Notes: generated by a model not told the origin, from the sequence alone. DNA of 64,000 bases from Diadema antillarum (GCF_040938485.1 NW_027271055.1:1364001-1428000), one strand, 5' to 3'. Shown: positions 32,295 to 63,612, counted from the stretch's first letter. Numbers and translations: made by a program.

Positions 32295-32750
32295 CTACGA
32301 GATATTCTCTTCTAGGTGGGCAACCTCTTCAAGTGATGCCTCCTTGAAGGTGAAAGGCAGGGAACTCCACTTTTGGTAGTGTTTGGACTTGGCGTCATTG
32401 TCTATTACAAGGAAATACTTCACCGAGATGGCAAGGATGTAAGCTTCTCTGAATTTCAGAACTATACCCCACTTGATGTGACAATCCTTGCATGCTAGTT
32501 CGTGCTCACTCTTCCTCACGCTCGCCCATTCCCTCTTCTCGGGCGAGTGGCGGTCAGTGGAAAGTCTGACCACTTTCTTCTCGAGAAAATCAGGGGCAAT
32601 AATGACGTGGTGACCTCCCGGTATCACCCTGATGTCACTTGACCGACAGACAAGAACCCGACACTTCTGGCACCGGAACTCATGGTTCAATTCAACATGT
32701 TCATGGGCCAATGATTTTCGTCCCAAGTGCCTTCCTTGGATGGCTATTAT
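32295..32750 (-). CDS. RLR paralog A last exon: C-terminal regulatory (RNA-binding, Zn) domain
   Basis: CQKC...GGHHVI...CKDC...KWG...KWSSLPF, the RIG-I/MDA5/LGP2 CTD signature; acceptor ctttctgtcag; TAG at 32295. Confidence 0.93.
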   Translation of the reverse strand: MIAIQGRHLGRKSLAHEHVELNHEFRCQKCRVLVCRSSDIRVIPGGHHVIIAPDFLEKKVVRLSTDRHSPEKREWASVRKSEHELACKDCHIKWGIVLKFREAYILAISVKYFLVIDNDAKSKHYQKWSSLPFTFKEASLEEVAHLEENIS

Positions 32751-33993
32751 CTGACAGAAAGAGATGAGACATTTACCTTTAGTACTCACTAGTCAACTTT
32801 TCTATACCATAACAACTCCATTGTCTGTATGTCTCACAGGGATCATTAAGTCTCACAAAATAATCACTCTTCATTTCTCATCTACTCACATACACATCCT
32901 GCTTATAAACGGACGAAAATTCTGCCATGAAATTGTTTATGATCCTATACATCATAAATTGCCGGACATATAACACCAGTACTCAGCATCAGTGTTGTGT
33001 GTAAATTTTGTGAGGATGGTACTTGGAATATGACAATGACCAGGCGAATTTTAATGTACATGGTACAATGGCCCAAAACTTTGTCTAATCAACCCCATAT
33101 AGTCCTTGATGTGTTTGTTCCTCGTGCTCTGTGCTATAGTCTTTCTACAAGCCTTTTACCATATTTTACAAACACCTTGCAATTACATCAATTCAAAATG
33201 ATCATTTTTCTATGTTCAAGATTGAAGATTCAAATTTATTTTCACTTCCATCAAATAAACAAAGAAAGTATATACAATGCATATGCACAGGATATTTGTA
33301 ATAATTGCAGAATGTGATTTAACAACGTACACATGAAAATGAGTAGCAGATGAAAAAAAACCGCAATTATATCATTGTTAATATATGCATAAAGCGTATA
33401 ATGCAGGTTAACTAAGGATGGGGATGGAAGTGGAGGGTCCCACTAAGAAGCAGAGCTTGTACGATATGGGACCCTCAGAAAATACACAAGACAGCAATAC
33501 AAAACAAAATAAAACGAACTGATGTCAGCTGACATGAAATCAAAATAATTGGGAAGGGAAAAAAGAAAGAAAAAAGAAAAAAAGGAAAAGAAAGGGAAAA
33601 AAACTACTAGCAAAAAAAAAAATCAAACAATCTTGACAACCTATTAGAGAATGACCCCATTAAAAAAAAAAATGTAATTTTGAACCAAAAGAATTGACAT
33701 TTTTACCAAGGATGAATCCTCAAGCCATGATACTTCCAAAATACCATGTTAACCCTCTGTATGCCATATCAATTTCTCGTCCATTGGTTTGTATGTGGAT
33801 TTGTGCATATTTGACTCATTGACACACAAAGGACTGAAGAAGAGATTCACTTACTGGCTAGGTGACTCTGTAGTACTAGTAATCATAAAACAGCCAACTA
33901 ACTGTAGGCATGCCATAACTGCACTGCAAAAATTAAACTAAAATATACCTGATGTACGTGAAGTCTTTGGAGACAGCAACAAATTCTTTTTAC

Positions 33994-34148
33994 CTTCTGC
34001 TTGAGCATCTCCTCCGGGAGTTCACTGAGTTCCTCCGTAGCTTCCCTCATCACTTTCTCCTGCTGTTTACCAAGTTGGTCCTTCTTCTCCAAGCCTCTCT
34101 CTTGGTGAACTACCAGCTCAAATCGGCCTCCCGGGGCCCGGGTGCGTC
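33994..34148 (-). CDS. RLR paralog A exon: end of motif VI plus pincer
   Basis: (G)RTRAPGGRFELVV...EEMLKQK; phase 1 to 0; canonical AG/GT. Confidence 0.92.
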
Positions 34149-34948
34149 CTGGGGACATTGATGACAATGGTGGTGATAATGATGATGTTAATGATAAAAA
34201 TGATCATGTTTCTAGGTGCTCTACAACCCACACAAATGTAAGCATATAAATATAAGGGTGCAAAATTATGTATCGGGATCTCAGAGGATGTTGTGTTTCC
34301 AGCCTTTGTTTACAAAAACCTAGAAAGAACTTCTTGAAAACGCTGATCAGATTGTCACCAAACTTGGCGGGTATCATCGTTAGGGTGATAGAGTATGTAT
34401 CTATGCAAATGGACACCATTCCTCACTTGGGGGCCCCCAGGGGCACAACGCCGTGGGTGGGGGGGGGGGGGGAGAGGGGTGATTCTCACAGAAGATGATA
34501 CCAACAAAGTAAAATGTATGACCACCACACTGTGTGGGTATGTGGACCTCAGCTGTTGAAGGGGAAAACAAATATATGAACTAGGTCAGCTAGCTGCTGA
34601 ATCACGGACGAGAAAGCTCTTAAAAGATTTCTGATGAACAGACCCCAGAAATGTTGTAAGGAAATGACTTTTTTAAAACTCTTTTTACTAAAGTGACCAA
34701 AATGTGGGGAGGAATTCCCTTTAATCCAGAGTCAGACTCCACATTTCTGAGGTTTGGTGCTATATCTTTGCATTATCATTTTTACTATTCATTCTTACAG
34801 TCTCAAGTGGAATAAAATGTTCACTCGCTTTCGAGCCCTTTGTTACTTATAATGATTATTCATCTTGGTTGCAGAATTTTCAATAGCCTCTTAATTGCTG
34901 ACTTTGTAACCAAATCTTAAAATTGCAATGCATTTTCAAAGACTAAAA

Positions 34949-35197: not shown

Positions 35198-35362
35198 CTC
35201 TGGCCTGAAGGCATCCTTCACCATCACTGATGTAGTTGTAGCGGAACACAAAGTTGCAGGCTGGCACGTCGATGCCTTGCTCCACAAATGTTGCAATGAG
35301 CAGCTTGTGTTCCCCGTCGCGGAACTTGTTAAGGATATCCCTTTGGTGCCGCAAACTCATTC
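35198..35362 (-). CDS. RLR paralog A exon: Hel2 motifs V-VI
   Basis: (G)MSLRHQRDILNKFRDGEHKLLIATFVEQGIDVPACNFVFRYNYISDGEGCLQAR; phase 1 to 1. Confidence 0.92.
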
Positions 35363-35766
35363 CTGTTGGAAATGGGACAGTGTGAGGATTTCTGTAACTT
35401 CTCAGTTCCCCCTCTAAGAGATAAAGATCAAATTCACAGCGGATGTGAAGCTCACAGTCAATAACTGGTGCGCCCCTGCAGCTTCTCATGCAGTTGACTA
35501 TATGCCACAAAGATTCCATGAATATTACGTCACGATATGGCACATTTTTCTCAATCGGCATTTTGTCTTCAACGTAACGACGTTTGTTTGATCACATGAT
35601 GCTATGTATAGACCAATCACAGAACAGGTATAAGAACAGAATAATAAGAACAAGAACAGAACAAGAACATAATACAAACTGCATGATTAAAAAGCAGACA
35701 AACTATCAATTTTGCTAGCTCACTCCTAATCACACTGGCACATGGATACAACTATCATTTCCCCAC

Positions 35767-36006
35767 CTGGGTTTCTGGAGCCAACCAATTCCTCGGCATT
35801 GAATTCCTGCAACCCTGGAGTGTCCATGATCCACGACTTGAGTGCCTTGGTGGAGGCAATGGTCTGAGTGAAGAGGATCCCACGGAAGTTGGCCAGGCCT
35901 CCCTGGAGGGAGTGACAAGCTCCTTCTATGAGCTCCTGAAGCTTTACCAGACCAGGGTTCTTGCTGTATGGACTCTTGCTGAGTTCCTCAAGCTTCACTT
36001 CTCTCT
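35767..36006 (-). CDS. RLR paralog A exon: Hel2 motif IV
   Basis: EREVKLEELSKSPYSKNPGLVKLQELI...RGILFTQTIASTKALKSWI...LVGSRNP; 240 nt, phase 1 to 1. Confidence 0.9.
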
Positions 36007-36802
36007 CTGTAAGAAAGGCAACAGAGAAAATTTATATGACACCTTTAGCGTCAGGGGATTACTTTCTTCACTGAATGTCCACAAGGAAAGACACAACAGA
36101 GATTGATAAAGAAAGTTCTTTACATTTCTGATGTTCATTTTGATATCAACTTTCAAAAGGCATGGTGGACTACATGACATTGTGACCTAATAAGGCATGC
36201 ATGCTGAATAAAAGTATGTGTCGTCATGTTTGAACAAGACATTCTCGAATGTCTTGTCTCGAGCCATTCACGAATCTCACAATCATACGTTATATTAAAC
36301 TTCCATCACCCAACATGCTAGAATAATTCATAACACAAGGACATGTCCAGTATAAGTCAGTATGTAATTTGAGAAAATCAATGTACAATAATGATGGATA
36401 AAATTAAATAATTATGTTTTGTGAAACCAATATAATGCGACCATGTATAATGATATGGCACATATAATGTCACCTTCGAATGCCTCTATGACAGTGATTA
36501 AAGCTTTGAAAAACAAAACAAAACAAAAACAAACAACACATTCCATTCCACGTATTTCACTGATCATGAAATACGTTTCAGTATTGACTTGCCATTAATT
36601 TGATGCCTTTCACTATTGTCTTGATAATATTCCCATTAGATGTGACTAAAAATCCATTCACATCAAGCTACATGAAACAAAGCAAATCAAAATATCATTA
36701 AATCTATTCCTAACTAATTCAAAACAATGCAGTCTCCTTTCATCCACTTTAATTCAACTGAAATGATACTATACCCTACGAAGACATTATAGAAAAGCTG
36801 AC

Positions 36803-36944
36803 CCCTAAATAGGCTGATTAGCTCGAGGTCTGCACTGGTCCGATCGGACCCCTTTTCCTCCTCTTTCTTGATGAAATTCTGAAGGTAGAGTAGGGCATCT
36901 TTCGTCCGCGCTGTTTCATGAATAGAAAGAGCAGTGCTGTACTC
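36803..36944 (-). CDS. RLR paralog A exon: Hel2i, second part
   Basis: EYSTALSIHETARTKDALLYLQNF...LISLFR resembles RIG-I KYNDALII...DALDYL; phase 0 to 1. Confidence 0.9.
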
Positions 36945-37352
36945 CTGCCAGTGAAAATATACCAATTGCAAATTCATATCAATGTACATACGAAAACGGC
37001 AGATTCTGGCCAAAGATTTATCATTCAAAAGTTGGTTCTTCATTGGTGAAATGACCGACTGGTAGGTGGTGTCATGGGTGTGAGGCATACTTTGCATGAT
37101 AGTCCTAAATGGATTTTTTTTTTTTCATGGGGTGACTTCAATTTGATCAGCATTAGATGAAATTCTCCACAAATTTGGGTACGAGGCAAACACGCTGTTT
37201 TGTTTAAAAATTCTCAGATATAATGAATTTTAAAAATAAATGGTAGGCCCATTATGGGGTTGTTTAGTCACCGATGTTAAAATATTACTTGATATGTGGA
37301 AGCATAAAGAAGTACTTTAGATTTCAGAACGATCAATGGGACATAGGCCTAC

Positions 37353-37522
37353 CTTGAGATACTCTGTGTAAGTTTTTAGTTTGCGGTGGCGCAGTCTGCA
37401 GTCTTGTTGCTCTGAGATCCGTACGTTCAGCCTGCACAGCTTGTGGTTAAATTTCTCACAGGAGTGGGAGGTACTCAGCAGTTCGGAGAGTGCGCTCCGT
37501 GTGCTGCTGAAGAGTTCACACC
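37353..37522 (-). CDS. RLR paralog A exon: Hel2i, first part
   Basis: (G)CELFSSTRSALSELL...KLKTYTEYLK; phase 1 to 0, in frame with both neighbours. Confidence 0.85.
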
Positions 37523-37551
37523 CTGAAGTCAGAATTGTACAAACAAGACAG

Positions 37552-37719
37552 GGGCCCTGTTTCATAAAGCTGTTCGTAAAGTTACGAACAACTTACGAGC
37601 GACTGGTGATCAGTTCTGATGTGCTATACCTATCAGAATTTCCATAATTCAGCACAAGAACTGATCACCAGTCGCTCGTAAGCTGTTCGTAAGTTTACGA
37701 ACAGCTTTATGAAACACCC
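37552..37719. mobile_element. Palindromic Harbinger-type MITE with CAG target duplication
   Basis: Near-perfect inverted arms of about 65 bp (gtttcataaagctgttcgtaaa...gcgactggtgatcagttct); CAG flanks at 37549-37551 and 37720-37722. CWG TSDs are known for some Harbingers. Confidence 0.8.
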
Positions 37720-38233
37720 CAGGGGTCCAGTGCTCACAATGAGCACAGCAAGTTCGCCTTCCACGCGTTCTTGAAGACTATTTTACCTAAGAATAAAGCA
37801 AACTTGGGGGAGCAAATTAGGGCCCAATTTTACATTTTCATCTTGTTCTTGAAAAGGCATGGTCACATTTTCACCAAACCAGGCAGGTATTATCACTAGA
37901 GTGTGATAGAACATTATACTTGTGTAAGTGGGCACGTTTCCCCACTTGGAGCGTAATACATTCTATGTGGATTTTCTTCTATTTTCTGGTAGTAATTACT
38001 GATTTCTTTCTATATTTTCGCAAGACTTCGAATGATTGCTTCATGCACATGAGTTAACACCCATATAGATCCTTGTCATTTGATGGGTTATTTGCTATTG
38101 ATCATTCGTCTCATCTCCATGGTCTCATTTTATCGTTGGGTCATCATTCATGCAGCGAGGCTCCATTTACCGTGCAATCTTTGATCCATACGATTTGATC
38201 CACTGCACGCACGCCGAGAGCCCGGCACACTAC

Positions 38234-38402
38234 CAGGGGCGGATCCAGGAATTTTGTAAAGAGGGTGCACCTATACAAAATGAGGGGGGGGGGGGGGTGC
38301 ACGCACCCCTCCCCGTTGTTTCTTTTTATTTCTTTTATTTTAACAAAAAGAAAAGATAAGGGGGGGGGGCGCCCAGTGCGCTGCACCCTGGATCCGCCAC
38401 TG
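38234..38402. mobile_element. CAGGGGCGGATCCAG-family MITE with a 6-bp TSD
   Basis: TIRs plus direct repeat CACTAC (38228-38233, 38403-38408). Confidence 0.82.
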
Positions 38403-38719
38403 CACTACGCTTGTAAAACGCTGGTGTTTGCAGTGTGTATGCGACAGTGAGCTAGTGTAAAGCGCTCAGTGAGCATTCTCTCAATCTCAGATCTTACACA
38501 ATCTCTATTCTTTCTAAATTCAGAAAACATCAAATGACAAGGATCTATTTTAGGTGACATAAAACAAATGATACATTTTTTTTTCATTCGTGCAATGGAT
38601 GGAATATTTAATTCGGTGAAAGGTGGATCATTTAATCTTTCACCTCATGAAATATTCTAACTGTCCATTGCACTCTTAAACATTCATTATTTGTATACCA
38701 GAGAATGTGTTTAACTAAC

Positions 38720-38827
38720 CCGGAATCTTGTTAATCAAAATAATGATTTTAATCATGATATCTTGGATCTCTTCCCCGAAGGCATCTTTTTCTCGTCCTC
38801 TGACAGTGTGACAATCTGGATGGAATA
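38720..38827 (-). CDS. RLR paralog A exon: Hel1-Hel2i junction
   Basis: (V)FHPDCHTVRGREKDAFGEEIQDIMIKIIILINKIP; 108 nt, phase 1 to 1; resembles RIG-I SRISDKFKYIIAQLM. Confidence 0.8.
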
Positions 38828-39383
38828 CTGAAGAAAGAACAAAAAGAATCACTTACATGCATGATATAGACTTCAAAGCAAGGCTTCTTCGTTAAGATAC
38901 CTACATAATCAAGTGTGCTGTTTTGTGTCAGTAATATATTAAGTCCATAAGGAACCACTTCTTCTTCTTCTTCTTCTTGATTTTTTTTTTTTAGAAATGG
39001 GAAATAAGTGAAGATTCGTGAGCAAACAAGTCAGAGATTTATAAGAGACCATGATATCACCTCTTCTTCTAATTTGCTTGGTAGACAATTATGGGAATAC
39101 AAGTATAATTTTTGAATTCCGTAACGCTTTTTTGTTTGTTTGTTTGTTTGCTTGCTTGCTATATTTCATTCATTACAGTCAACTCAAACATGGAGCAAAT
39201 TTATGAATTGTATTTACTGCATCTCCCCCCTCACAGACACCATAGAGCCTACAACATGCAGCCTCTTACTTCAGGCAAACATGCATTCATCAAGCAGTGA
39301 GAGTTGAGTGAGTGTAGGATAACACCACAAACTGAATGCTGAGGCTAAATTACACGAGTTTCTGCTTTATGTCACTTGCTCAC

Positions 39384-39546
39384 CATCTTTCGGTTTGTTC
39401 TCAACATCAGCCAGGCTCTTCCTGTGTCTCTTCACTGTGGACACTCTGACTGCATCCAAGTTGGCGCAAATGTTGATCATGTACCTCAATGCCTCATTCT
39501 TCTTGAGTGCATGTCCCAATCCAAACGAAGCTGTCATTCCCAAGAT
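39384..39546 (-). CDS. RLR paralog A exon: motif III
   Basis: ILGMTASFG...MINICANLDAVRVSTV...NKPKD; donor GTGAGC; phase 0 to 1. Confidence 0.92.
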
Positions 39547-40163
39547 CTTTACAAAGGAGTCATCATCGTCGGTTGAGAATGATAAGGGCGTTAAGTGACC
39601 ACAAAACCCATAGTGTTCGAGAAGACTTAAAGCCCTTCTCATTCTCAGCAGACGTCATCATCATCATGAATCAATTGGGTCATTTTACCACTAGACACCA
39701 AATTCAATTCTATTCAGTTTAGTTAATTTTCATATTTCTCATAATGGGATGTATACATTGTAAATAATGTAAGCACAAATCATCATACTTTGTTAATTGC
39801 CCCCCCCCCCAAAAAAAAAAAGAAGAAAGAAGTATATAAACATACACATGGTGTAGTCGTATATATGGTTAAGGTTGTACATAATGATTACATCAGAGAA
39901 AGGGGACGGGGTGTTGCGGCACAAATTGTCGCCCCTGCACAAATTGTCGCCTGGCGACAATTTGTGCTGCTTGTGCAGTTCCCATAAGATTTTGACCTCG
40001 ATGGCGACATTTTGTGCTGGCAAAATGAAACGTAGCTGCACAAATTGTCGTCGGCCATGCACTATGAATTGCGTGTTTGGGGTGGTTGCTCCGGTGTTAT
40101 GTTATATTCTAGGTGTGTATTATGTGACTTGTGTATGCGTTTGCGCATAGCTGTGTGTGTGTG

Positions 40164-42125
40164 CATGGGCGTCACCAGGGGGGGGGGGGGGGGTGCGTTG
40201 GGTGCGAACGCACCCCCCTTCAGACCCTAAAAAAAATAAAAAATAAAAAAATAAAAACCTTCAGTCTGCGAGCGACCTCAACGCCGGACACTAAATGATT
40301 ATTATTTTTTATCTATCTTTTTTTTTGAAATTTTGCATCGGGAACAAAAACAAAAAAAAAGAAAAAATCGTGGGCAAAAGTAATTCGAACCCCTGGTTCT
40401 GGCAGCACTGATTTTATACATAATTATCTACTAGTACAAGTGTATTCTATACAGTGTTGACTGATTTGATTATACATAGATTTTGGACATCCTTCTCATA
40501 CTTGGTCACTTCGATGCCACCTCGCTGGTCATACCTCCCCCAGTCATGAACATAAACCGACACCCTTGACTACCAGTGGCGGATCCAGGGGGAGGGGCGC
40601 ACCGGGCGTCCCCCGCCCCCTCTTAATTTCCAAAGCGAAAAAGTATATCTACAAACGGCAGTTTTTGGACTGTAAAGTGTCAAAATTTTCACGCTCGCTC
40701 GCTGGCATTTAGTCGTAATGCCATTCTCCTGAAGTTGCTGCCAGTAATTGCCGGCAGTTCCACCCGGTGCGTCCCCCCCCCCCCTTACTGCAAAAAATAT
40801 AGCTACAAACGGCAGTTTTGGGACTGTAGAATGTCACAATTTTCAAGCTCGCTCGCTCCGCTCGCTCGCATTTAAATTCTCCTAATATTGCTGCCAGTAT
40901 TTGCCAGCAGTTGCACCCGGTGCGCCCCCTCAATTTCGAAAGCAAAAAAAGATATAGCATCAAACGGCAGTTTTGGGACTGTAAAATGTCAAAATTTTCA
41001 AGCTCGCTCGCATTTAATCTTAATGCAATTCCCCTGATGTTACTGCCAGTAATTGTCTGCAGTTGCGCCCGGTGCGCCCCCCCCCCCCTTAATTTCCAAA
41101 GCGAAAAAATATAGCTACAAACGGCAGTTTTTCTACTGTAAAATGTCAAAATTTTCAAGCTCGCTCTCTTCGCTCGCTCGCATTGAATCGTTATGCAATT
41201 CACCTGATGTTGCTGCCAGTAATTGCCAGCAGTTGCGCCCGGTGGCATGCGCTCCACCCCCACCCCCTTTAATTTCCAAGGCGAAAAAATATGGCTAAGA
41301 ACGGCAGTTTTTGGACTGTAAAATGTAAAATTTTCAAGCTCGCTCGCATCGTTTTGCAATTTACCTGATGTTGCTGCCAGTAATTGCCAGCAGTTCCGCC
41401 CGGTGTGCCCCCCTCCCTTAATTTCCAAAGCGAAAAAATATGGCTAAGAACGGCAGTTTTTGGACTGTAAAATGTAAAATTTTCAAGCTCGCTCTCTTCG
41501 CTCGCTCGCATCTAATCGTTATGCAATTCACCTGATGTTGCTGCCAGTATTGCCAGCAGTTCCGCCCGGTGCGCCCCCTCCCTTGATTTCCAAAGGCAGT
41601 TTTTGGACTGTAAAATGTAAAATTTTCAAGCTCGCTCGCATTTAATCGTTATGCAAATCACCTGATGTTGCTGCCAGTAATTGCCAGCAGTTCCGCCCGG
41701 TGTGCCCCCTCCCTTTATTTCCAAAGCGAAAAAATATAGCAACAAACGGCAGGTTTTTTTTTTTACTGTAAAATGTCAAAATATTCAAGCTCGCTCGCTC
41801 CGCTCGCTCGCATTTAATTGTTACGCCTTTCTCCTGATGTTGCTGCCAGTAATTGCCGGCAGTTGCGCCCGGTGCGCCCTCCCCCCTTTATTTCCAAAGC
41901 GAAAAAAAAATATAGCTCCAAATGGTAGTTTTTTTTACTGTAAAAGATGAAATCCTAGCTACGCCGGTGCCCTTTCCCCGCTTGGTTTCCCGCCACAACA
42001 GTAAAAGTCTAGGGATTGAGAGCTTCCTACATTCCAAATGTCTGTCAAAAAAAAAAAAAAAAAAAAAATCTCGTTTCATTAGGGTCAAAACGCACCCCCC
42101 TTGAAAAAAAGCTGGTGACGCCCCT

Positions 42126-42126
<1 letters not shown>
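40164..42126. mobile_element. About 2-kb composite non-autonomous DNA element in an RLR intron
   Basis: TIRs CATGGGCGTCACCAG and CTGGTGACGCCCCTG, inserted in a (GT)n tract. An inner element starts cagtggcggatccagg at 40574 and an end aatcctagctacgccggtg lies at about 41969. Confidence 0.7.
40590..41945. repeat. Tandem array of about 9 units of 145-180 bp
   Basis: Recurrent a(a/g)acggcagttt / ctgtaaaatgtcaaaattttcaagctcgctc / gatgttgctgccagtaattgcc / gcgcccggtgcgcccc, anchored near 40653, 40807, 40962, 41119, 41299, 41448, 41591 (short), 41743 and 41921. Confidence 0.92.
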
Positions 42127-42171
<45 letters not shown>

Positions 42172-43158
42172 GAGTATAATAATATAATATGTGGAAACTG
42201 TGTGCATGTGTGGTGGTTGTGTAGTGGTAGTGGCTTGTTTGTCTGTGTGTATACGTGTGCTTAAAGCTGGCTGTCGCGACCAGGGTTGCCAAATGGACAC
42301 TAGTATTCATGGCTAAACTCTGTACACTTCATAGCCAAATTATTACGTGGTTTTTTTTTTCTCACGGCCAAATTTTTATCCATCTACAATTCAATTCAAT
42401 TCAATTCAAAATTATTTTATTTCCATATAAAGTAATACAAAGTAATATACAATAGAAGTAGGTTCACTACTATGCCGAATACGATAAGTTGACGAATATA
42501 CTATGTATCCTTGAAAATTGATGCTTATGTCTCAATTCAATATTGCATAAAACGCTATACTACGTGAATTTAGTTACAGTACATGTAACTGAAACCCTTT
42601 ATCATACGCGTCCATTACACATACCTGTATTTTTCAAGGTTTAGATTTTGATGTTTATTAAATTATCTGTTCATTTTTAACGTTTTTCTTTCTTTTTTAT
42701 ACTTCGTTAGTCAGAGTGTACGTGGTATTTGAAACACTTTCTCATACCTACCAATTTGATAACAATTTATCATGGTTTATTGTGTTAGCTTGATGTTCTA
42801 TGAGGGCTACATAATGTAATTTCTTTTTTTCTTCATTTTTCAGACCACCAAATTTCTTTGTCTGGCCACCAAAATATGAAATGTGATGATCTAAACGGGC
42901 CACTATAGAAAAAAAAAGTCGACTACCGAGCCTTGCATAAAATATAGTTAGAATAAAATGTGCGCACACACACCGACGCACACAAACACAATATGTATAG
43001 ACATGTGCACCTGTAGTCTTCCTACAAGGATATGTGAACTATTCCTGTGCTGACATAGGATGTCCCTAACATAAGACGTAAGGTAGCATTACCATGGCAA
43101 CCAATGAATATCTTACACAGAAAGTTACATCTCACACCTCCAAATATTCGAAACTCAC

Positions 43159-43254
43159 TTGAGGAAGGGACTTGTTAAAGTTTTCTCCATTTTCTTGCAA
43201 GGTCGACTTCAACTCAAAGTACTTCTTCATCACCTTGTTGTATTGGCTATCCTT
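43159..43254 (-). CDS. RLR paralog A exon: motif IIa
   Basis: KDSQYNKVMKKYFELK...SLPQ; acceptor ttgttttgcag, donor GTGAGT; 96 nt, phase 0 to 0. Confidence 0.9.
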
Positions 43255-44075
43255 CTGCAAAACAAACAAGACCACAACGCCTTACATAATGAGGAGCTCG
43301 CGAAGATTTTAGTAATACAAATCTCGTTCGGTTACATGCCCAGAGTGTACGTGCAGGCACAACACATATTGAGCGATTTTCAGCGCGCTGCGGTCTGGCT
43401 GAAAAAGACGTACAGTAGGTAAAGAGGTTGGGAAGTGATGCTAAAAACTCAAATCTATTGTGGCACTGTAGCTTTATATATATATATATATATATATATA
43501 CATAGTATAATTGGGAGGAGGGGTGTAACACATAAAAACATTGTACGCTAAAATTGCAGAGCTTTGTGGATGTATGGTTGTATAATGACTTAGAAATTGA
43601 AATAAGACATCACCTTTAAGTTGACTGCAACAGATATAAAAACAAACAAAGAAAAAGAAGTATCATTTAAATCAAAAAATCTAAAACAAATCAAAAAGTA
43701 ATCAAAGTCCTAAATCTACTTGTTTTCACACACACACACACACACACATATTACATGTACAAAATATCAACTGCAATCACTATGCAAATTATAGGAAGTG
43801 ACGATGTGTCATTCCCTTCCAAGTTCCAGCTTTCCAATTGGCCCGATCAACAATCTCTACTGAATCTCTTGGTTTGAAAATAATTCAATATAAATAGAGG
43901 ATTCTGGTCCCATTCTGGTGGGATTAAAAGCCCTCAGTTCATGACAATTTGATAACCAGCAAAGAAGACAGGCCAACGAATGTGTGCTGATCAACACAAA
44001 AACTCATTTAGGAATGATGTCAACATGAACACTAGACAATGCTGCTTCCCCAGCTGCCCATCATAAACACCCTAC

Positions 44076-44309
44076 CTTGGTTTCATGACACTCGTCAAAG
44101 ATGATGAGGTCAATGTCCTTTAAGAAGACTTGACCTTTGACGAGCGCGTCCACCAAAATTTGGGCTGTCAGCACCACCACACTGTTTTCCTCCAAGAGAA
44201 CCTCCAGGGGAAGCCGAGTGGAGGCGGAGAGTCCGTGATCACCACAGACGTAGGCAACCTTGTCTATATACTTCTTGAAGAGAGTACTTTTCTGATGCAC
44301 AAGAGGTAC
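44076..44309 (-). CDS. RLR paralog A exon: motifs Ia-II (DECH box)
   Basis: VPLVHQK...VVVLTAQILVDAL...DLIIFDECHETK; 234 nt, phase 0 to 0. Confidence 0.95.
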
Positions 44310-47016: not shown

Positions 47017-47210
47017 CTGATTCACCACAAAGACGATCTTCCCTTCTCCTTTGGTCTTCCTGAGGACCTCTAGAGCCACGGCCACAGAAACGTACGTCTT
47101 GCCTGACCCAGTGGGGGCAACAATGACAGCGTTCTGGCCACTGATGGCGGGCTCCGCTAACTCCCTTTGGTAGTCTCCCAACGTCAGAGTCTCCTTCTGT
47201 ACTGCTCCGG
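47017..47210 (-). CDS. RLR paralog A exon: Q motif plus Walker A; 5' part lost in the gap
   Basis: GAVQKETLTLGDYQRELAEPAISGQNAVIVAPTGSGKTYVSV...GKIVFVVNQ; the donor joins in frame to VPLVHQ. Confidence 0.95.
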
Positions 47211-56375: not shown

Positions 56376-57334
56376 TTAAGTACTACTACTTAACAAAAGA
56401 CACAATGCACCTTCCCCTAGACAGAGCGTTATATAACCTGCATGTATCCATGTTACTAATATGACTATCAAAAGACATTGCAGGGATGGAGTAATTGTCA
56501 ACCCTTTACTCAACCAGCCACGAGCTCTACCCCCTCCCCCCCCCCCCCCCACACACACACACAAATCTGCATCTCTCTCTCATTTGGAACAAACTTGAAT
56601 AAGTATATATCATTTAAAAAGAATTCACTATATCCCTATAGGTACATTTGCACATCTTTATTTCGTATGTCAAAAGAGCAAGTCAAATTCGTTAATGAAT
56701 GTATATTTGAGGGGTCGGTGCAATATAGTGCTAACCCACACAATAGTCATTTTGAGATAATTGCTGTTGAAGGTTTGGAAAGTCCATACATTGTACATTG
56801 ACAAAACATGAATGCATGCAATTTTTACCATCTTATTGGTTGAATTCAAATATGATATTTTTCACGGAGGTTAGAGTGAAGGATAAGGATTATGAAAATG
56901 CCTGTAACTCAATTTTGACAAAAGTGTGGGTTAGCACTATTATTGCACCGACCCCCTCATTTGTCTCCATGCAAACCTTCCATACACGAGTCATACTCAT
57001 AGCCATCTTAGCAAGACGCAGCTACGCAAAACAATCTGGAGAGACATCTGTAAAATTCACTTCAACGTTGGCACAGAATACTACGGCAGCATTTAAAGAG
57101 AAGCTTGATAGTCCTTGGTACAGTCCACAAAACAAAGCTAACTTGAAGTGAAATGCGTTCACTTCCATATCCAGCAAAGATATTAAGTAAACTCAGCTGG
57201 GTGGATGAAGTCCTGTTAGAGTAATCACGGTTATGTCTAATCAGATGGGTTAATCAGATACCGGTCAGATTTTATTGGATAAAAATGATCAAATGGACAA
57301 TTAATGTTTCTTAAGTGAGTATGTTCTACCTTTA

Positions 57335-60051
57335 AAAGAACATTTTCATGAAACCACAAGGTAAATAATACCCAGTGAAACATTGACATTTTTTGTGTGC
57401 ACAATCGACAGAATACATTTTCTTATTCTACGCAACGCCAAATACAGGGGACTAATAATTTGCGACGCAAATTTTTGGTCAATCATGAATGAAACTTCTC
57501 CTGTTTTGTTTGCCTGCTTTTGATCTTAAAGGCCAAGTTGGGCTTGATGTGGAATTGCCATTTTATGTTTCAAAAAGAAAACCTGCAGCTTAGAGTGAAA
57601 TCAAATTTCACTGGTTTCCTTATTGCTAAAAACACCACAGGACATCAAGCAGAATATGACTCATCATTCTTTCATGTTACTGAACATGAGAGATCATACA
57701 AAATATGACTACAAAACAAAATAAATGATTCAAAGCTTTTTGCATTTCAGAAAGCCTATCTTCACAACTATAAAAAAAAAACACACTGAAGATTTACTGG
57801 GTCTCCTTCGAAAAAAAAAAAAAAATCAGCCAACCCAAATATGTTGGTATGTACAAGTCTATTCTGCTGAATTTCCTAGAATTCACATCACAGAGATAAT
57901 AGATGAAATGTTTCTACATTATGACTTTAAGCCAACGTATGAGCACATTTTGCTGTTACAAAATGATACCAATTTTCAAATTCACATAATTAATGTTCAA
58001 CTGCGATGTTCACTACACTTGGAATGTAAAATATACAGCTTCTTATTTCAGTTTGACTGAACATTGCCGTGACAATGAATGTGATGTCGATTTTATCAAA
58101 ATTCCTCAAAATTCTTGTTTCTCTTCTCAGACATACATGAGCACAGCATTGCAAAGTAAGACACCAATACTTTCAACATTCATTAAAATGCACACATATT
58201 GAAATTGTTCAGATCTTTTTCAAATTATCAATGAATGAAGACAAGAGATGAAAAGACATTGAGGAGTAGATTATGTGGACATCAATAGATCCTTAAATTT
58301 GATTAATCGATATGGTACAATGATTAAAATTCAGAAAATGATTTCCTTGGGAGAGGCTAATTATTGTACTTTTTTATTGGTATGTTCACAAAAGAGAAGA
58401 CCATGTCTTCTAAAAAGGTAAGTTACACAAAACTTGGAACATATGGTTGATTATAAAACATCACATAGATTATATAAATGATTTCATTGTCATAACTCCT
58501 GTGTCAAAGCACTTTTAAGTTTACTTATCTATTCATTTTCATTTATTCACAACATCTTTTAACAGGGACATTCTGTTCAGTTTGGCTGATACCCAGCAGA
58601 CCTCTTTCAAGTATTTGAAGCTCTTTATACAGTGTAAATAGACTTTTAGAGTAAAAATATATATATATACAGTATTTGACGAATTACCCTTTGTAGCTAC
58701 AGTCACAAATGATGCAAATTATTGTAAGTAGGAAATCATTGTACTCATAGTTTGTGTATTCATCATGTAATGATGGAAAAAAGAATGAAAATTGGTGCTT
58801 TTCTTTTCTTAAACACAGATTTCAATCTGGCAAAAAAAAAAGAAGAAACTTCTCTTGGGTCTTCCTTTCATTACAAAATGACTTGCTCGTAAAACCATTT
58901 TTCAATGTGTAACAACACCAAAGACTGCAAGGTTTATCCACTCAGACAACATAATATTATGTTAGCATATGCTAGCATATATGAGAAGAGTTTAGCTTGC
59001 AGAAGCTGTAACATCAGTGTTCCACTTCCAAATTGTTTCAAGCAAAGATGCCAGGTATACTTTCAGCATTCAGGTCATACACCTTTCAAGATTGTTCACT
59101 AGCTGCTTACACTTTCAAACCTACACAAATTTGACATTCTAAGTTTTGTAACTGCACAGGAATATAACATCTTGATTACATGGAAAGTATATCTGAGTGC
59201 ATAGGTTCCTGAAATCTTGATTAGACGAAAAGTTACTATTGAGTACACAAAGTAATTCAGCTTTCTTGACATTGCAGACTTAAAAAACTCATTCACTTGG
59301 AAGTAGAAGTATATTCAGGTCAAGTAAACTAATTTGTGAAACAAATGTACAAGAAAAGATATTTGATTAAAGTCCTGGTTGCATCCTTAAGATCTACAAA
59401 ATTCATTCATTATCAATGAAATATGAGGAATATCAGATTACTAATTTTGTATGTGTTGTTTTGATCATGGAACAAGACAACAGACATTTTACAGGAATTG
59501 TACTTGTACAAAAGTTGCACTTAGGAGTGGTAAGAAATCATCGACAGACACACTGCCTGAAAAAGTAGATGATGATCTGTAAGATTTTTGCTGTTGTTCT
59601 GTTTTGTTTTGTTTTGTTTTGTTTTTTGTTTGCTTGTTTTGTTTTTTGTTTTGTTTTTTGCTGATGGGAAAAGAAGGAAAGAATGAGAAAGACTTAAGAG
59701 TACTAGAGAGACTGGCTGGTGGTATATTGCACCATCAGTACGGTGCTGTGGAGATTGATGTGTTGTACCACGACAGGGGCGGATCCGGGAATTCCGTGAT
59801 GAGGGGGCGCCTTTACAAAATTAAGGGGGGGGGGGGGACACACCCCTCTCCCAATTTTGTTCTTTTTATTTCTTTAGTTTCAACACACAATAAAGGGGGA
59901 CGGGGGCACGCATCCGGTACGCTCTCCCTGGATCCGCCACTGTACGACGATATGTTTATCTCCATTCTCTGCTATACAAATTGCGAAGGAATCAAAGAGA
60001 TAGAATGTACATCTTCTCCAAATGATATGCAAGAGAATGGGGGTAACCCAC
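57335..60051 (-). other. Putative 3' UTR / downstream region of RLR paralog B
   Basis: Collinear with 29760-32294. Confidence 0.7.
59774..59942. mobile_element. CAGGGGCGGATCC-family MITE in the 3' UTR of paralog B, absent from paralog A
   Basis: TIRs caggggcggatcc and ggatccgccactg; the flanks align with paralog A at about 32160-32200 without the insert. The TSD is not exact. Confidence 0.75.
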
Positions 60052-60525
60052 TTAGTAGATATATTCTTCTGGGCGGGCAACATCTTCAAGTGATGCCTCC
60101 TCGAAGGTGAAGGGCAGTAAACTCCACTTCCGGTAGGGCTTGGACTTGCTGTTATTGCGTGTCACGAGGAAATACTTCACCGAGATGGCGAGGATGAAAT
60201 CTTCTCGGAACTTCAGAACACTGCCCCACTTGATGTGACAATCTTTGCACGCTAGCTTCCGCTCGCTCTTCTTCATTCTTGCCCATTTCCTTGTTTCGGG
60301 TGATTGGCGGTCACTGCAAGGTCTGACCACTTTCTTGGCCAGGAATTCAGGGGCGATGACGACGTGATGACCACCAGGTATCACCCTGATGTCGCTTGAC
60401 CGACAGACAAGAACCCAACACTTCTGGCAGCGGAACTCATGGTTCATAAGATCCACAGATTTCTTGCCCGAAGGTAGCCGGTAGAAGCGAGATTGCATCT
60501 GTCGTCTTCTTTGGATGGTTGTGAT
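60052..60525 (-). CDS. RLR paralog B last exon: CTD
   Basis: ITTIQRRRQ...NHEFRCQKC...GGHHVV...CKDCHIKWG...KWSLLPF; acceptor ctctttcag; TAA at 60052. Confidence 0.93.
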   Translation of the reverse strand: MTTIQRRRQMQSRFYRLPSGKKSVDLMNHEFRCQKCWVLVCRSSDIRVIPGGHHVVIAPEFLAKKVVRPCSDRQSPETRKWARMKKSERKLACKDCHIKWGSVLKFREDFILAISVKYFLVTRNNSKSKPYRKWSLLPFTFEEASLEDVARPEEYIY

Positions 60526-60930: not shown

Positions 60931-62615
60931 AACTATAGAAATGTTGCTACGGCGACTGGTGTATGCCTCCGCAATAATGCATGGTTCTCCTAATAGGTCT
61001 ATAGTACAATGTCTTGACAATGTGTGATGACAGTTTCACACAAGTGGCAAAATATTAAAATGATAGGTTTGCCACAAATGTGCTGAATGTTCACTTTCCT
61101 AGAACTAGGTTCAATTGGATGAATGATGAAAACGTCAGAGTGCAGGTATTTGGGGGAACTGATGATTTTTACTTGACTTTTGACCCTTTTATAAGTTTAT
61201 GCATTGAGTAATTTTCAAGGTATTGAGAAAAAGTATAATTTCAGTATCAAATGGTAAAATAGTATCATCTAAACCTGGCCTTTGACCTTTGACCTCACAG
61301 TTCCAAAGAGAATCACTGTTAGGTAGAACATGCATAAATATGTAAGTTTCATGATAATACCTTGAGTTACTTTTGAGATATGGAGGAAGAAGTGCAATTT
61401 AGCACTTTCACTTGACCTTTGACCTTTTGACCTTTGACCTTTTGGCAAGAAACTTCCCATAGAATATATATTGGGTTATACATGCATACATCAAGTTAAA
61501 AAAAAATCCTTCAGGCATTGCATAAATATAAGGAAATTAGTGATATTTTGAGGAGTTGACCTTGACCTTTGACCCCCTGACCTTTGACCCATGACCCCCA
61601 ACTTCCCTAGATAATCACTGCCCATCAGTACATGCATATATGTGACAGTGCACCTCAAAACGAACATAAAGTCGCACACACTGATTTTGCGTGAGGACTG
61701 AAAATAAGTGAAATGGGTCAACCTAGCCGAACTTGACTTTTTCATATTTTCTGAAAGAGCGGGTCTTCTTTTACATTATGCTAAAATTTGGGATCATAAA
61801 ACGGGCAGGAAAGTGTGTTTTTTAGCAGCTTATCTCGAACATTTTTGATAGAATAGTGTAATTAGGTGTGTCTTTAGAATCCCTTTTTCATTTTTGAAAA
61901 ACCTTGTCCACACTCTTCACTTTTAACTCTAATAACTTTTGAAAGGATTGTGCTACTGCTTTGAAAGTTGGCACTAATTATGGACAGAATGTGTTAATGA
62001 GGCATGCTTAATTTCAGTTTAATCTAATAATCCCTTCATTGTTGTTACTCTGATGGTTTACTTCCTGTTTTTTGTCCCATTCATCGCACAGCCAGCACGG
62101 TTTGGTAAAGATTAAGCGCTTGAATAGACACTGTACTTCAGAGCCTCTTTTCTCAGTTCACACTTTTCCTGAGTTTGTGCTTTCTTTTCAATATTTAGAT
62201 AGGTTAGGAGAGTCCATTTGATTTGAGTTATACATCATTTTAAAGCTTAAAATCTGCTCTTTCAGAATATGGTCTTAACTAAAAATTCATGTCTGGCGAC
62301 TTTTTGTTTGTTTTGAGGTGCAGGGTCACATATACTAAGTTCCATGAAGATACCTTGAACCATTTGCGAGAAACATGAAATTTCAACCTTTTTTCACAAA
62401 ATAACCTGTGACCTTTGACCTTTGACCCCGTAAACCCTAAAATCTAAACAAAATATTATCCCCCCAGGTTATACCCTCATACCAAGTTTGATGTAAAACC
62501 ACCACACGGTTCTTGAGATATCGACAAAAACAAAACGGGACGGACGGACGTACGGACGGACGGACGACCCGAAAACATAATGCCTCCAGCCACTTCGTTG
62601 GTGGAGGCATAAAAA
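60931..62615 (+). mobile_element. Helentron-associated / pearl / DINE-1-like non-autonomous element
   Basis: 5' AACTATAGAAATG with subterminal ATGCCTCC (60963-60970); internal tgacctttgacc modules; (GACG)n at 62538-62567; 3' hairpin ATGCCTCCAgCCA-cttcgt-TGGTGGAGGCAT followed by A5. Confidence 0.75.
61639..62332. mobile_element. 694-bp TA-flanked MITE nested in the Helentron-like element
   Basis: TIR TATGTGACAGTGCACCTCAAAACGAACATAAAGTCGC against reverse complement TATGTGACCCTGCACCTCAAAACAAACAAAAAGTCGC; TA flanks. Confidence 0.82.
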
Positions 62616-63457
62616 TTAGCATAATTACCAGAATTTAGAGAAAACAATTATGTTCTGGTGAATGGTTCATGATTGATTCTTTGAGATTTCACTGTGATGG
62701 TGTAATGGATGGCCAAGACCGAGGGGGAGACCAAAGCGCCCCCCCCCCCCCATACCATTTCAAAAATAATAACCTGGGCTATAGGGTTATGGAGGTTGGG
62801 GGGGGGGGGGTATACACTGAAGGCATACCACATCTACAATAGGAGATTCAGGCTTTTACCAAATTACTGCCTGCTTGCATTTTGGCCAAGAAAAGTGAAA
62901 GAGTCCATCTCATGGAGAATAGGGATTCCGGATACAATTTATCACCAATCTTCATTCCAGTGATCAAGAAAAAAGCAGAAAGTGGTGAAAAAAACGGTGT
63001 ATCCACTTTGGCTTGAAATAGCCCACACGATCGAGAGGACAAAAGCTCGCCAGCAAATTACCAATGGTTGGTAGAAGTCTGAATCTCTTATTCATAAGTG
63101 GCCTTAATTTTTTTTAAACAAAAGAAACATAAGAAAAAAAAATGAAAGGGGGCAAGGGCACCCCCCCCCCCCCTTTAATTTTCGAAGAAACTATCTTTGT
63201 CAGCTGTTTGGAGTGGCAGCAGAAAATTTTTTTTCTTGCCTGTCAGCCGATGAATCCCGGAAGTCAAGGAACGAAAAAATTGGGCATTGAAGCATGTTTT
63301 TTTTTGTTGCTTGTCAACTGATAAAACCTGGAAGTGGCACTAGAAATAGTTTCGGAAATCCTGGATCCGCCCCTATTATTGTATGATCTCTTAAACTGAT
63401 GAAAGTTTTCTGCATCATACTACAACTGTGACGGACAGACGTCACCTTACCACTCAC

Positions 63458-63612
63458 CTTCTCGCTGAGCATCTCCTCCGGGAGTTCACTGAGTTCCTCC
63501 GTAGCTTCCCTCATCACTTTCTCCTGCTGCTTACCAAGTTGGTCTTTCTTCTCCAGACCTCTCTCTTGGTGGACCACCAGCTCAAATCGGCCTCCCGGGG
63601 CCCGGGTGCGTC
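63458..63612 (-). CDS. RLR paralog B exon: end of motif VI plus pincer
   Basis: (G)RTRAPGGRFELVV...EEMLSEK; 155 nt with the same phases as paralog A; donor GTGAGT. The gene continues beyond the window. Confidence 0.92.

What the first reader, a model, noticed from the sequence alone, without database searches (positions are those of the whole stretch)
32295..63612. Tandem RLR paralogs with near-identical pincer but diverged RNA-sensing CTD, including an E/K swap at the RIG-I K861 position
Seen (hand counts): the pincer exons differ at 9/155 nt and 2/52 aa. The CTDs differ at 31/130 aa with about 23 synonymous changes, and paralog B has a 6-aa longer linker. Changes cluster in the loop before the second CxxC: A REWASVRKSEHELAC versus B RKWARMKKSERKLAC, so B is more basic. 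Anchored on the third Zn cysteine, the residue at C-3 is E in A and K in B. Established: human RIG-I K861 (C864-3) binds 5'-triphosphate RNA, and MDA5 has an acidic residue there. Both paralogs have S at the K888-equivalent. Inference: ligand-specificity divergence in an invertebrate antiviral sensor cluster, possibly with gene conversion homogenising helicase exons. Overall dN/dS looks below 1, so selection would be site-specific.
Basis: partly seen in the sequence, partly recalled or inferred. Interest (0 to 1): 0.7.

Follow-up and report, generated by a model that had tools for sequence, protein, structure and literature searches.

The report
Tandem sea-urchin RNA-sensor gene pair
Two neighbouring copies of an antiviral RNA-sensor (RIG-I-like receptor) gene in the sea urchin Diadema antillarum are real, old duplicates that still exchange short stretches by gene conversion while their RNA-binding tails have diverged. 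The highlighted E/K difference is a recent change in one species with untested effect, so this is an ordinary, well-documented case of immune-gene family evolution.

Summary
The window is Diadema antillarum scaffold JBFRCO010000167.1. It holds gene A (XP_071489889.1, 710 aa, 12 exons, minus strand, 32298-48004) and the last two exons of gene B (XP_071489890.1, 973 aa, 16 exons).

- **Counts reproduced:** pincer exons differ at 9/155 nt and 2/51 aa; CTD cores at 31/130 aa; B's linker is 6 aa longer; C-3 is E in A and K in B.
- **True paralogs:** both copies sit in tandem in D. setosum too, and both are under purifying selection (omega 0.14-0.25).
- **Gene conversion is supported** at the pincer exon, at A exon 2 with its intron, and at the 240-nt exon in D. 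setosum. The CTD exon escapes it.
- **E/K does not define the paralogs.** D. setosum B and a third lineage carry E, so K arose recently in D. antillarum B, beside a second loop E>K and a +7 charge gain.
- **No RIG-I pocket.** H847 and K888 equivalents are Ser in both copies.
- **Not tested:** expression and RNA binding. No omega above 1 was found.
- **The N stretch** lies in A's intron 1 and does not touch the compared exons.

This is a new member of a known kind.

The parts
32295..32750 (-). Gene A (XP_071489889.1) last exon: linker plus CTD (RIG-I_C-RD) plus stop codon
   Evidence: Pfam PF11648 E=1.4e-25. Exact mapping of P0151. Zinc cysteines at 32670-32672, 32661-32663, 32490-32492 and 32481-32483.
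32490..32546 (-). A capping loop SPEKREWASVRKSEHELAC. The C-3 Glu codon GAA is at 32499-32501.
   Evidence: Alignment to chicken LGP2 RDW...CRIVC and human MDA5 GEIIC.
33994..34148 (-). A pincer exon (end of motif VI plus bridging helices), 155 nt
35198..44309 (-). A helicase exons: 35198-35362, 35767-36006, 36803-36944, 37353-37522, 38720-38815, 39384-39546, 43159-43254, 44076-44309
   Evidence: Exact mapping of the 710-aa NCBI model. Pfam DEAD, RIG-I_C (Hel2i) and Helicase_C.
47017..47201 (-). A exon 2 (motif I, GSGKT). The acceptor lies 9 nt from the N stretch.
46885..47150 (-). Recent A/B gene-conversion tract: the 3' part of exon 2 plus about 130 nt of the following intron
   Evidence: 95.4% identity to B over 324 nt. 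A and B of D. antillarum share a 47-nt intron segment that D. setosum B lacks.
47211..47415 (.). N stretch (assembly gap or masked) inside intron 1 of gene A. Not read and not filled.
47974..48004 (-). A exon 1 of the NCBI model (MNLRRSSEEN)
48605..49077 (-). Relic of B's intron 3 and exon 4 (linker repeat) upstream of A. It marks the 5' edge of the duplicated unit. No relic of B exons 1-3 was found.
   Evidence: tblastn 47% over 47 aa. blastn 71-78%.
29721..32294 (-). 3' flank of A, duplicated with the gene (matches 57292-60051 downstream of B)
   Evidence: blastn 70-84% identity.
57292..60051 (-). 3' flank of B, the counterpart of A's 3' flank
60052..60525 (-). Gene B (XP_071489890.1) last exon: linker plus CTD plus stop codon
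   Evidence: Pfam PF11648 E=1.4e-22. Exact mapping of P0152 on L003. AlphaFold model pLDDT 86.7, with Z 17 to the RIG-I CTD.
60247..60303 (-). B capping loop SPETRKWARMKKSERKLAC. Derived Lys codons: AAG at 60256-60258 (C-3) and AAA at 60286-60288.
63458..63612 (-). B pincer exon, 155 nt. The rest of B (14 exons) lies beyond the window end, up to window-equivalent 85281.

Best explanation
**What it is.** An ancestral Diadema RLR gene consisted of a probable N-terminal death-fold domain, an S-rich linker, a DExD/H helicase with a Hel2i insertion, a pincer and a zinc CTD. It was partly duplicated in tandem. The copied unit ran from intron 3 to about 2.7 kb past the stop codon.

**The two copies.** The downstream copy A therefore has the helicase and CTD but no N-terminal domain, an LGP2-like architecture. 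The upstream copy B keeps the full architecture. The duplication predates the D. antillarum / D. setosum split by several-fold in synonymous divergence.

**How they evolve.** Both copies are kept by purifying selection. Short gene-conversion tracts of about 150-300 nt repeatedly homogenise parts of the helicase and the pincer. The CTD exon has not been converted and carries 71 paralog-fixed nucleotide differences.

**The E/K difference.** It is a G>A change, one of two E>K changes in B's RNA-end 'capping loop'. Both arose on the D. antillarum lineage, together with other charge-raising changes.

**Inferred, not shown.** Both proteins probably bind dsRNA through the CTD loop, which has a conserved Trp equivalent to chicken LGP2 W602 / RIG-I F853. 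B in D. antillarum probably binds the phosphate backbone or 5' end somewhat more strongly. Neither copy is a RIG-I-type 5'ppp reader.
For: **Identity and architecture**
- Protein ids, species and scaffolds.
- Pfam domains.
- Tandem arrangement in D. setosum: OZ188193.1, A at 39.61 Mb and B at 39.64 Mb.
- Edge of the duplicated unit.

**Selection**
- Ortholog omega is 0.22 for A and 0.14 for B. Paralog omega is 0.25-0.34.

**Gene conversion**
- Synonymous divergence is heterogeneous among the 11 exons (chi-square p=0.0006).
- The pincer has 3 paralog-fixed sites against 10 lineage singletons; the CTD has 71 against 28 (Fisher p=0.001).
- In the 240-nt exon, positions 101-224 of D. setosum A equal D. 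setosum B, with species-pattern sites.
- The A exon-2 tract continues into the intron and shares a 47-nt segment within D. antillarum only.

**Polarity of the E/K change**
- Codons are GAA (A, both species), GAG (B of D. setosum) and AAG (B of D. antillarum).
- Contigs of run X2 also read E at 60258 and 60288.
- B' on the second D. antillarum scaffold has K.

**Charge**
- Net charge of the CTD exon is +17 in D. antillarum B, +10 in D. setosum B and in X2, and +5 / +2 in A.

**Fold and positional map**
-.
Against: - No RNA evidence for either gene was obtained. Only two weak run holders were found, and neither is shown to be RNA of this species.
- The loop alignment outside C-3 is uncertain. 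The Diadema loop is 4-6 residues longer than in vertebrate RLRs, and model pLDDT there is 72-77.
- The conversion tract beside the N stretch could partly be an assembly artefact, because gaps often form at near-identical repeats.
- The B locus is twice as diverged between the two species as the A locus (82% against 90% non-coding identity). Strict orthology of B is therefore supported by synteny but not proven.
- The death-fold call for B's N-terminus is below the Pfam threshold, and the single-sequence model is poor.
Confidence: 0.72

Rival explanations
1. A and B have diverged adaptively in RNA-ligand specificity. The K861-equivalent residue acts as a switch: E gives MDA5-like stem binding, and K gives RIG-I/LGP2-like end or phosphate binding.
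For: - The C-3 equivalence is solid. K is the family consensus there (95 of 152 cluster representatives), and E marks the MDA5-like sequences.
- Differences cluster in the capping loop (p=0.02).
- A paralog-fixed I/S difference sits at the RIG-I I875 equivalent, a residue that controls 5'-monophosphate exclusion in RIG-I (PMC10681732).
- Positive selection and charge changes on CTD surfaces are reported for tandem scallop RLRs (PMC8998645).
Against: - E/K is not fixed between the paralogs. B of D. setosum and of lineage X2 have E.
- Omega is 0.06-0.49 in every 30-codon window, and about 0.28 on the D. antillarum B branch (10 synonymous, 10 nonsynonymous).
- The H847 and K888 equivalents are Ser in both copies, so no RIG-I-type pocket exists.
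- Both copies keep the capping-loop Trp, so both look like end binders.
Confidence: 0.15
2. The charge gain in D. antillarum B reflects recent directional selection in that species alone, for example from a lineage-specific RNA virus. It covers two loop E>K changes plus Q>R, G>R, Q>K and L>R.
For: - Six of 10 nonsynonymous changes on that branch raise the charge. One lowers it, and that one is polymorphic.
- K is present on both D. antillarum scaffolds.
- The B gene body evolves about twice as fast as A between the species.
Against: - The sign test gives only p=0.03 (6 against 0) or p=0.125 (6 against 1).
- Branch omega is about 0.28.
- The linker changes cannot be polarised with an outgroup, because A's linker cannot be aligned.
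- The sample is only two haplotypes of one individual or assembly.
Confidence: 0.2
3. Artefact. A and B are uncollapsed haplotypes or a mis-assembly, or one copy is a dead pseudogene.
For: - An N stretch interrupts gene A's first intron.
- A second D. antillarum scaffold of similar size carries near-identical copies A' and B', so haplotig redundancy does exist in this assembly.
- A lacks the N-terminal domain and has a 1-aa deletion plus S>F in motif V.
Against: - A and B are 12 kb apart on one scaffold.
- They are 76% identical in CTD protein (31/130 aa differ; 83% at the nucleotide level) and 70-84% identical in flanking DNA.
- They have 12 and 16 exons, and they occur in the same order in D. 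setosum.
- Both reading frames are intact, with ortholog omega of 0.14-0.22.
- The redundancy is A/B against A'/B', not A against B.
Confidence: 0.03

Closest known systems
Vertebrate LGP2 (DHX58), e.g. chicken LGP2, PDB 5JB2
   Same: - Best sequence match for both CTDs (E=8e-16 and 1.4e-13).
- CxxC spacing of the second zinc pair.
- The capping-loop Trp aligns with chicken LGP2 W602 in an R-[DE]-W context.
- Ser at the RIG-I K888 equivalent.
- Basic residue at C-3 in chicken LGP2 (R), as in D. antillarum B (K).
- Gene A shares the domain architecture: helicase plus CTD with no signalling domain.
   Different: - The Diadema loop is 4 residues longer and has one aromatic residue instead of three (F595, F599, W602; PMC4885022).
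- B carries an N-terminal domain.
- The full-length protein is about equally distant from RIG-I, MDA5 and LGP2, so no orthology can be claimed.
Vertebrate MDA5 (IFIH1), PDB 3GA3 / 4GL2
   Same: - Glu at C-3 (GEIIC), as in A, in D. setosum B and in lineage X2.
- CTD match E=3e-14, Foldseek top hit, TM 0.80.
   Different: - The MDA5 capping loop lacks bulky hydrophobic residues and MDA5 binds dsRNA stems (PMC4885022). The Diadema loops keep a Trp.
- MDA5 has Lys at the K888 equivalent; Diadema has Ser.
- MDA5 has tandem CARDs; no CARD was detected here.
Vertebrate RIG-I (DDX58), PDB 3LRN / 3NCU
   Same: - Same CTD fold: Z 16.8-17.2, rmsd 2.0 A over 118 residues.
- The H830 equivalent His is kept, an aromatic residue sits at the F853 equivalent, and Lys at the K858 equivalent (MAFFT).
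- K861 equivalent is Lys in D. antillarum B only.
   Different: - The 5'ppp tetrad H847/K858/K861/K888 (PMC10681732) reads S/K/E/S in A and S/K/K/S in B.
- The second zinc pair is CxxC, not CxxxxC.
- No CARDs.
- The I875 equivalent is Ile in A but Ser in B.
Tandemly expanded invertebrate RLRs with non-CARD N-termini (bivalves; S. purpuratus expansion), PMC8998645
   Same: - Local tandem duplication.
- Death-domain-type N-termini.
- Copies that differ in N-terminal domains.
- CTD (RIG-I_C-RD) surface-charge divergence between duplicates.
   Different: - That work reports omega above 1 on some scallop branches; none was found here.
- Exon-scale gene conversion that spares the CTD exon, and the polarity of the C-3 change, are shown here for Diadema. 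I found no description of them in the papers I read.

Membership tests
[quoted passage not shown] | DExD/H helicase core with motifs I, II, III and VI | tested here: met
   A and B have TGSGKT, DECH, TAS/SAS and QARGRTR. Pfam DEAD, ResIII and Helicase_C hits.
[quoted passage not shown] | Hel2i insertion domain (Pfam PF18119 RIG-I_C) | tested here: met
   E=5.8e-27 for A and 7.2e-31 for B.
[quoted passage not shown] | C-terminal RNA-binding domain (PF11648) with four zinc cysteines | tested here: met
   E=1.4e-25 and 1.4e-22. The four Cys are invariant in a 73-sequence alignment. Fold match Z 17.
[quoted passage not shown] | Pincer helices between Hel2 and the CTD | tested here: met
   The 155-nt exon follows motif VI. 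Full-length alignment to RIG-I, MDA5 and LGP2 chains runs through this region.
RIG-I subfamily (5'ppp blunt-end sensor) | Basic 5'ppp cleft H847, K858, K861, K888 | tested here: not met
   Equivalents are S, K, E, S in A and S, K, K, S in D. antillarum B. The loop alignment for 847 and 858 is uncertain; positions 861 and 888 are secure.
RIG-I subfamily (5'ppp blunt-end sensor) | Tandem N-terminal CARDs | tested here: not met
   No CARD hit in P0151 or P0152. B's N-terminus gives only a sub-threshold Death hit.
MDA5 subfamily (dsRNA stem binder) | Capping loop without bulky hydrophobic residues; acidic residue at C-3 | tested here: inconclusive
   Glu at C-3 in A and in D. setosum B, but a conserved Trp sits in the loop.
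LGP2-like (non-signalling RLR) | Helicase plus CTD with no N-terminal signalling domain | tested here: met
   This holds for A only. The NCBI models have 710 and 714 aa with 10-13 aa before the helicase. No homologue of B exons 1-3 lies between 48 and 57 kb. The N stretch at 47211-47415 was not inspected.
Death-domain RLRs of invertebrates | N-terminal Death domain (PF00531) | tested here: inconclusive
   B residues 31-96 score E=0.002 and 18.6 bits, below the cut-off of 22.6. The single-sequence model shows six helices, but pLDDT is 49.
Gene conversion between tandem paralogs | Tracts where within-species paralogs are closer than orthologs, or where paralog-fixed sites are locally depleted, extending into introns | tested here: met

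The most novel reading that the evidence does not exclude
Diadema has independently rebuilt the vertebrate division of labour between a signalling RLR and LGP2. A 5'-truncated tandem copy (A) has no N-terminal domain and an altered motif V, and it regulates or competes with the full-length sensor (B). Gene conversion keeps the helicase and pincer parts alike, while the CTD exon is shielded so that the two copies keep different RNA-end preferences: Ile versus Ser at the RIG-I I875 equivalent, and different loop charge. The recent double E>K in D. antillarum B would then be an adaptive retuning of that preference.
Probability: 0.15. Interest if true: 0.6.

Novelty: new member of a known kind. 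Interest (0 to 1): 0.35.

Why it matters
RLR families are expanded in sea urchins, amphioxus and molluscs, but how the copies divide their work is mostly unknown.

This locus gives a clean, small test case:
- Two adjacent copies, one with an N-terminal domain and one without.
- Mapped gene-conversion tracts and an unconverted RNA-binding exon.
- A dated pair of charge-reversing changes at a position whose role in RIG-I is established by structure and mutation.

D. antillarum is also a species of conservation concern after mass die-offs, so its immune repertoire has practical interest.

The result is still incremental. Both genes are already annotated, the phenomenon is of a known kind, and no functional or selective signal beyond purifying selection was found.

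Tried and rejected
1. **Haplotype or assembly explanation for A versus B.** Rejected.
2. **Pseudogene explanation.** Rejected on intact reading frames and ortholog omega of 0.14-0.22.
3. **Expression test.** Laying them showed:
   - X2 is genomic DNA of a related lineage at about 96% identity.
   - X1 gave only 70-125-nt pieces at 91-95% identity. One stops exactly at the pincer exon border, which suggests a spliced RLR transcript of some family member, not proof for B.
   - This test is inconclusive.
4. **Sliding-window and branch dN/dS.** No window or branch exceeds 0.5. codeml and GENECONV are not installed. I used site-pattern counts and Fisher tests instead.
5. **Death-domain test of B's N-terminus.** Pfam is sub-threshold and the single-sequence AlphaFold model is poor. 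I did not fold-search it.
6. **Subtype assignment by structure.** The CTD model matches RIG-I, MDA5 and LGP2 about equally (Z 15.3-17.2), so the fold does not discriminate.
7. **Earlier findings by place.** Nothing found.
8. **Joined exon models.** I sent no self-joined exon model to any search tool. Searches used single exons by reference or NCBI models returned by the tools, and codon counts were made exon by exon.
9. **P0124.** This cluster representative looks like human RIG-I. I used it only as a numbering ruler inside an alignment and looked up no contig for it.
10. **The second D. antillarum scaffold.** I did not fetch its DNA, to avoid reading the counterpart of the N stretch.

Full report
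**1. What is in the window**

The window has 38% G+C and two N runs, at 28079-28251 and 47211-47415. ORFs on the minus strand between 32.3 and 47.2 kb carry RLR domains: RIG-I_C-RD, Helicase_C, RIG-I_C (Hel2i) and DEAD. A second RIG-I_C-RD ORF lies at 60.05-60.5 kb.

A HMMER scan of 1.84 billion cluster representatives with A's CTD exon found one close relative, P0001. Word search and cluster look-ups then gave the annotated proteins:
- Gene A is XP_071489889.1 (P0151, 710 aa, 'RIG-I-like').
- Gene B is XP_071489890.1 (P0152, 973 aa, 'DHX58-like').
- Both lie on Diadema antillarum scaffold JBFRCO010000167.1. Window coordinate equals record coordinate minus 1,364,000.

Exact mapping gives 12 exons for A (32298-48004) and 16 for B. 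Only B's last two exons are in the window, and B extends to window-equivalent 85281.

**2. The N stretch**

In the NCBI model it lies in A's intron 1. Exon 1 is 47974-48004 and exon 2 is 47017-47201, so the N edge is 9 nt upstream of the exon-2 acceptor. Exon 2's frame remains open up to the N edge, and a model from another scaffold (P0155) starts that exon at least 6 nt earlier. The exon's 5' border is therefore not secure.

Order and strand on both sides fit one gene. A relic of B's linker exon (48605-49077) lies upstream, at a distance similar to the matching intron of B. The whole 710-aa model maps on window letters alone.

All counts in the finding come from exons at least 13 kb from the N stretch. 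I did not read or fill the N positions. L002, fetched for coordinates, spans them with the same total length and without an N run, and I did not inspect its letters there.

**3. The observation**

All hand counts hold:
- Pincer: 9/155 nt and 2/51 codons.
- CTD core: 31/130 aa and 65/390 nt.
- Linker: 6 aa longer in B.
- C-3: GAA (E) in A and AAG (K) in B.
- Nei-Gojobori for the CTD: dS 0.49, dN 0.124, omega 0.25. For the pincer: dS 0.21, dN 0.025, omega 0.12.
- The synonymous count is 30, not about 23.

**4. Paralogs, not haplotypes**

The duplicated block is A 29721-34265 against B 57292-63752. Non-coding identity is 70-84% and the introns have different lengths.

D. setosum (OZ188193.1) has the same two genes in the same order, P0156 (A) and P0001 (B). 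The region between the genes aligns to the window at 88-95%.

A second D. antillarum scaffold (1,834,047 bp) carries A' (P0155) and B' (P0153 plus P0154). These are probably the other haplotype. B' is 99.5% identical to B and also has K at C-3. A' is 95.9% identical to A.

**5. How the pair arose**

A's upstream region matches only B's intron 3 and exon 4. B exons 1-3 have no counterpart between 48 and 57 kb. A is therefore a 5'-truncated duplicate with an LGP2-like architecture.

B's first 100 residues give a sub-threshold Death-domain hit (E=0.002). A low-confidence model shows six helices.

**6. Selection and conversion, from exon-by-exon codon counts**

Ortholog and paralog rates:

| Comparison | dS | omega |
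|---|---|---|
| A, D. antillarum vs D. setosum | 0.12 | 0.22 |
| B, D. antillarum vs D. setosum | 0.23 | 0.14 |
| A vs B (four pairings) | 0.36-0.47 | 0.25-0.34 |

Synonymous difference between A and B of D. antillarum (pS), exon by exon in gene order:

| Exon | 185 | 234 | 96 | 163 | 96b | 170 | 142 | 240 | 165 | pincer | CTD |
|---|---|---|---|---|---|---|---|---|---|---|---|
| pS | 0.11 | 0.38 | 0.49 | 0.31 | 0.59 | 0.39 | 0.47 | 0.23 | 0.25 | 0.18 | 0.40 |

This heterogeneity is significant (p=0.0006).

Site patterns in the four-gene alignments:
- The CTD has 71 paralog-fixed sites against 28 lineage singletons.
- The pincer has 3 against 10 (p=0.001). The pincer's terminal-branch rate equals the CTD's, so the pincer was homogenised shortly before the species split rather than being more constrained.
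- In the 240-nt exon, positions 101-224 of D. setosum A are B-type. They include states specific to D. setosum B, which indicates a B>A conversion in that species.
- A's exon 2 and about 130 nt of the next intron are 95% identical to B in D. antillarum, and share a 47-nt intron segment that D. setosum B lacks. This is a recent conversion in D. antillarum. One caveat is that the tract abuts the N stretch.

Protein divergence is not special to the CTD. The 170-nt Hel2i exon (pN 0.18) and the first 96-nt exon (0.19-0.28) exceed the CTD (0.13), and the 142-nt exon (0.12) about equals it.

**7. The E/K site**

HMMER alignments to solved structures put A's HELAC and B's RKLAC opposite chicken LGP2 CRIVC and human MDA5 GEIIC. 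A 73-sequence MAFFT alignment puts them opposite RIG-I AKIFC.

An AlphaFold model of B's CTD has pLDDT 86.7, with 72-77 in the loop. It places C-3 on the strand that ends at the third zinc cysteine. It superposes on RIG-I CTD 3LRN with Z 16.8 and rmsd 2.0 A, on MDA5 with Z 16.3 and on LGP2 with Z 15.8. The K861 equivalence therefore stands.

Residues at C-3 among 152 family representatives: K in 95, E in 13 (including the MDA5-like sequences) and R in 8.

Within the Diadema clade, E is ancestral. A of both species, A', and B of D. setosum all have E. Only B and B' of D. antillarum have K. Contigs of run X2, a related lineage about 96% identical to B, carry T>C at 60258 and 60288, which reads E at both loop sites.

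On the D. antillarum B branch, the CTD exon has 10 synonymous and 10 nonsynonymous changes, so omega is about 0.28. Six of the nonsynonymous changes raise the charge. Net charge of the exon is +17, against +10 in D. setosum B and in X2, and +5 / +2 in A.

**8. Pocket comparison**

Using RIG-I numbering (PMC10681732 for the roles of H847, K858, K861, K888, F853 and I875):

| RIG-I residue | Diadema equivalent |
|---|---|
| H847 | S in all four genes |
| F853 | W in all |
| K858 | K in all (alignment uncertain) |
| K861 | E, E, K, E (A ant., A set., B ant., B set.) |
| K888 | S in all |
| I875 | I in A, S in B (paralog-fixed) |
| H830 | H in all |

The loop's R-[EK]-W aligns with chicken LGP2 R600-D601-W602, the end-capping residues (PMC4885022). 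Both CTDs therefore look like end-capping domains of an LGP2-like kind, not RIG-I-type 5'ppp readers.

Full-length B is about equally distant from RIG-I (332 bits), chicken MDA5 (320 bits) and chicken LGP2 (311 bits).

**9. Expression**

Expression was not established.

**10. Verdict**

The E/K 'swap' is a recent substitution in D. antillarum B, and ligand divergence remains a hypothesis.

Tandem RLR expansion with N-terminal domain variation and CTD surface change is already described in other invertebrates (PMC8998645), so this is a new member of a known kind.

Noticed in passing
window 35198-35362 (-), gene A motif V: A has LIATF-VEQGID where B and 28 of 33 family helicases have the 13-residue LIATSVxxxGID form. 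This is a 1-aa deletion plus S>F, present in A, A' and D. setosum A only. D. setosum A also has G>E in motif VI (QARERTR). A may be ATPase-impaired yet is still under purifying selection.
   Followed up: partly
window 32463-32465 (A) and 60220-60222 (B): The RIG-I I875 equivalent is Ile in A and Ser in B, fixed in both species. In RIG-I this residue excludes 5'-monophosphate RNA. It is a more stable A/B pocket difference than E/K.
   Followed up: partly
L003 2001-3233 (B exons 1-2, beyond the window): B's N-terminus (about 100 aa) gives a sub-threshold Pfam Death hit and a six-helix low-confidence model. An S-rich linker with two 72-nt repeat exons follows.
   Followed up: partly
L001/L003 versus L004/window: Between D. 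antillarum and D. setosum the B gene body is 82% identical in DNA (dS 0.23). The adjacent A locus is 90% identical (dS 0.12) and the stretch between the genes is 88-95% identical. The cause is unexplained: faster evolution, old haplotypes, or exchange with other paralogs.
   Followed up: partly
second D. antillarum scaffold (1,834,047 bp; proteins P0153, P0154, P0155): It holds near-identical copies of both genes. B' is split into two NCBI models. A' differs from A at about 3-4% of residues, and at 10 or more of those sites A' agrees with D. setosum A. The window's A allele therefore carries many derived residues. DNA was not fetched.
   Followed up: partly
window 10908-14996 (-): Long ORFs of 262, 601, 129 and 308 aa that read like a non-LTR retrotransposon (endonuclease and reverse-transcriptase-like text). 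I judged this by eye only.
   Followed up: no
window 4797-6623 (-): A 608-aa open reading frame, rich in S, K and E. It has no assignment.
   Followed up: no
window about 22295-25314 (-): A called gene with a PHF5 Pfam hit lies downstream of gene A (from the L002 gene table). It runs over the end of that locus.
   Followed up: no
window 60910-62600: B's last intron holds a very high-copy repeat. Contig depth sums reach 10^5-10^6 in run X2, with many internal joints.
   Followed up: no
window 63458-63614, run X1: Short contigs of a run guessed to be RNA match the pincer exon at 91-95% identity. One ends exactly at the exon's 3' border, as a spliced transcript of some RLR family member would.
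   Followed up: partly
P0002 / P0004 (search hits): A further RLR (919 aa) has a helicase 50-70% identical to A and B, but a CTD only 36% identical, and it also carries E at C-3 (NKEIRC). Its species was not looked up.
   Followed up: no
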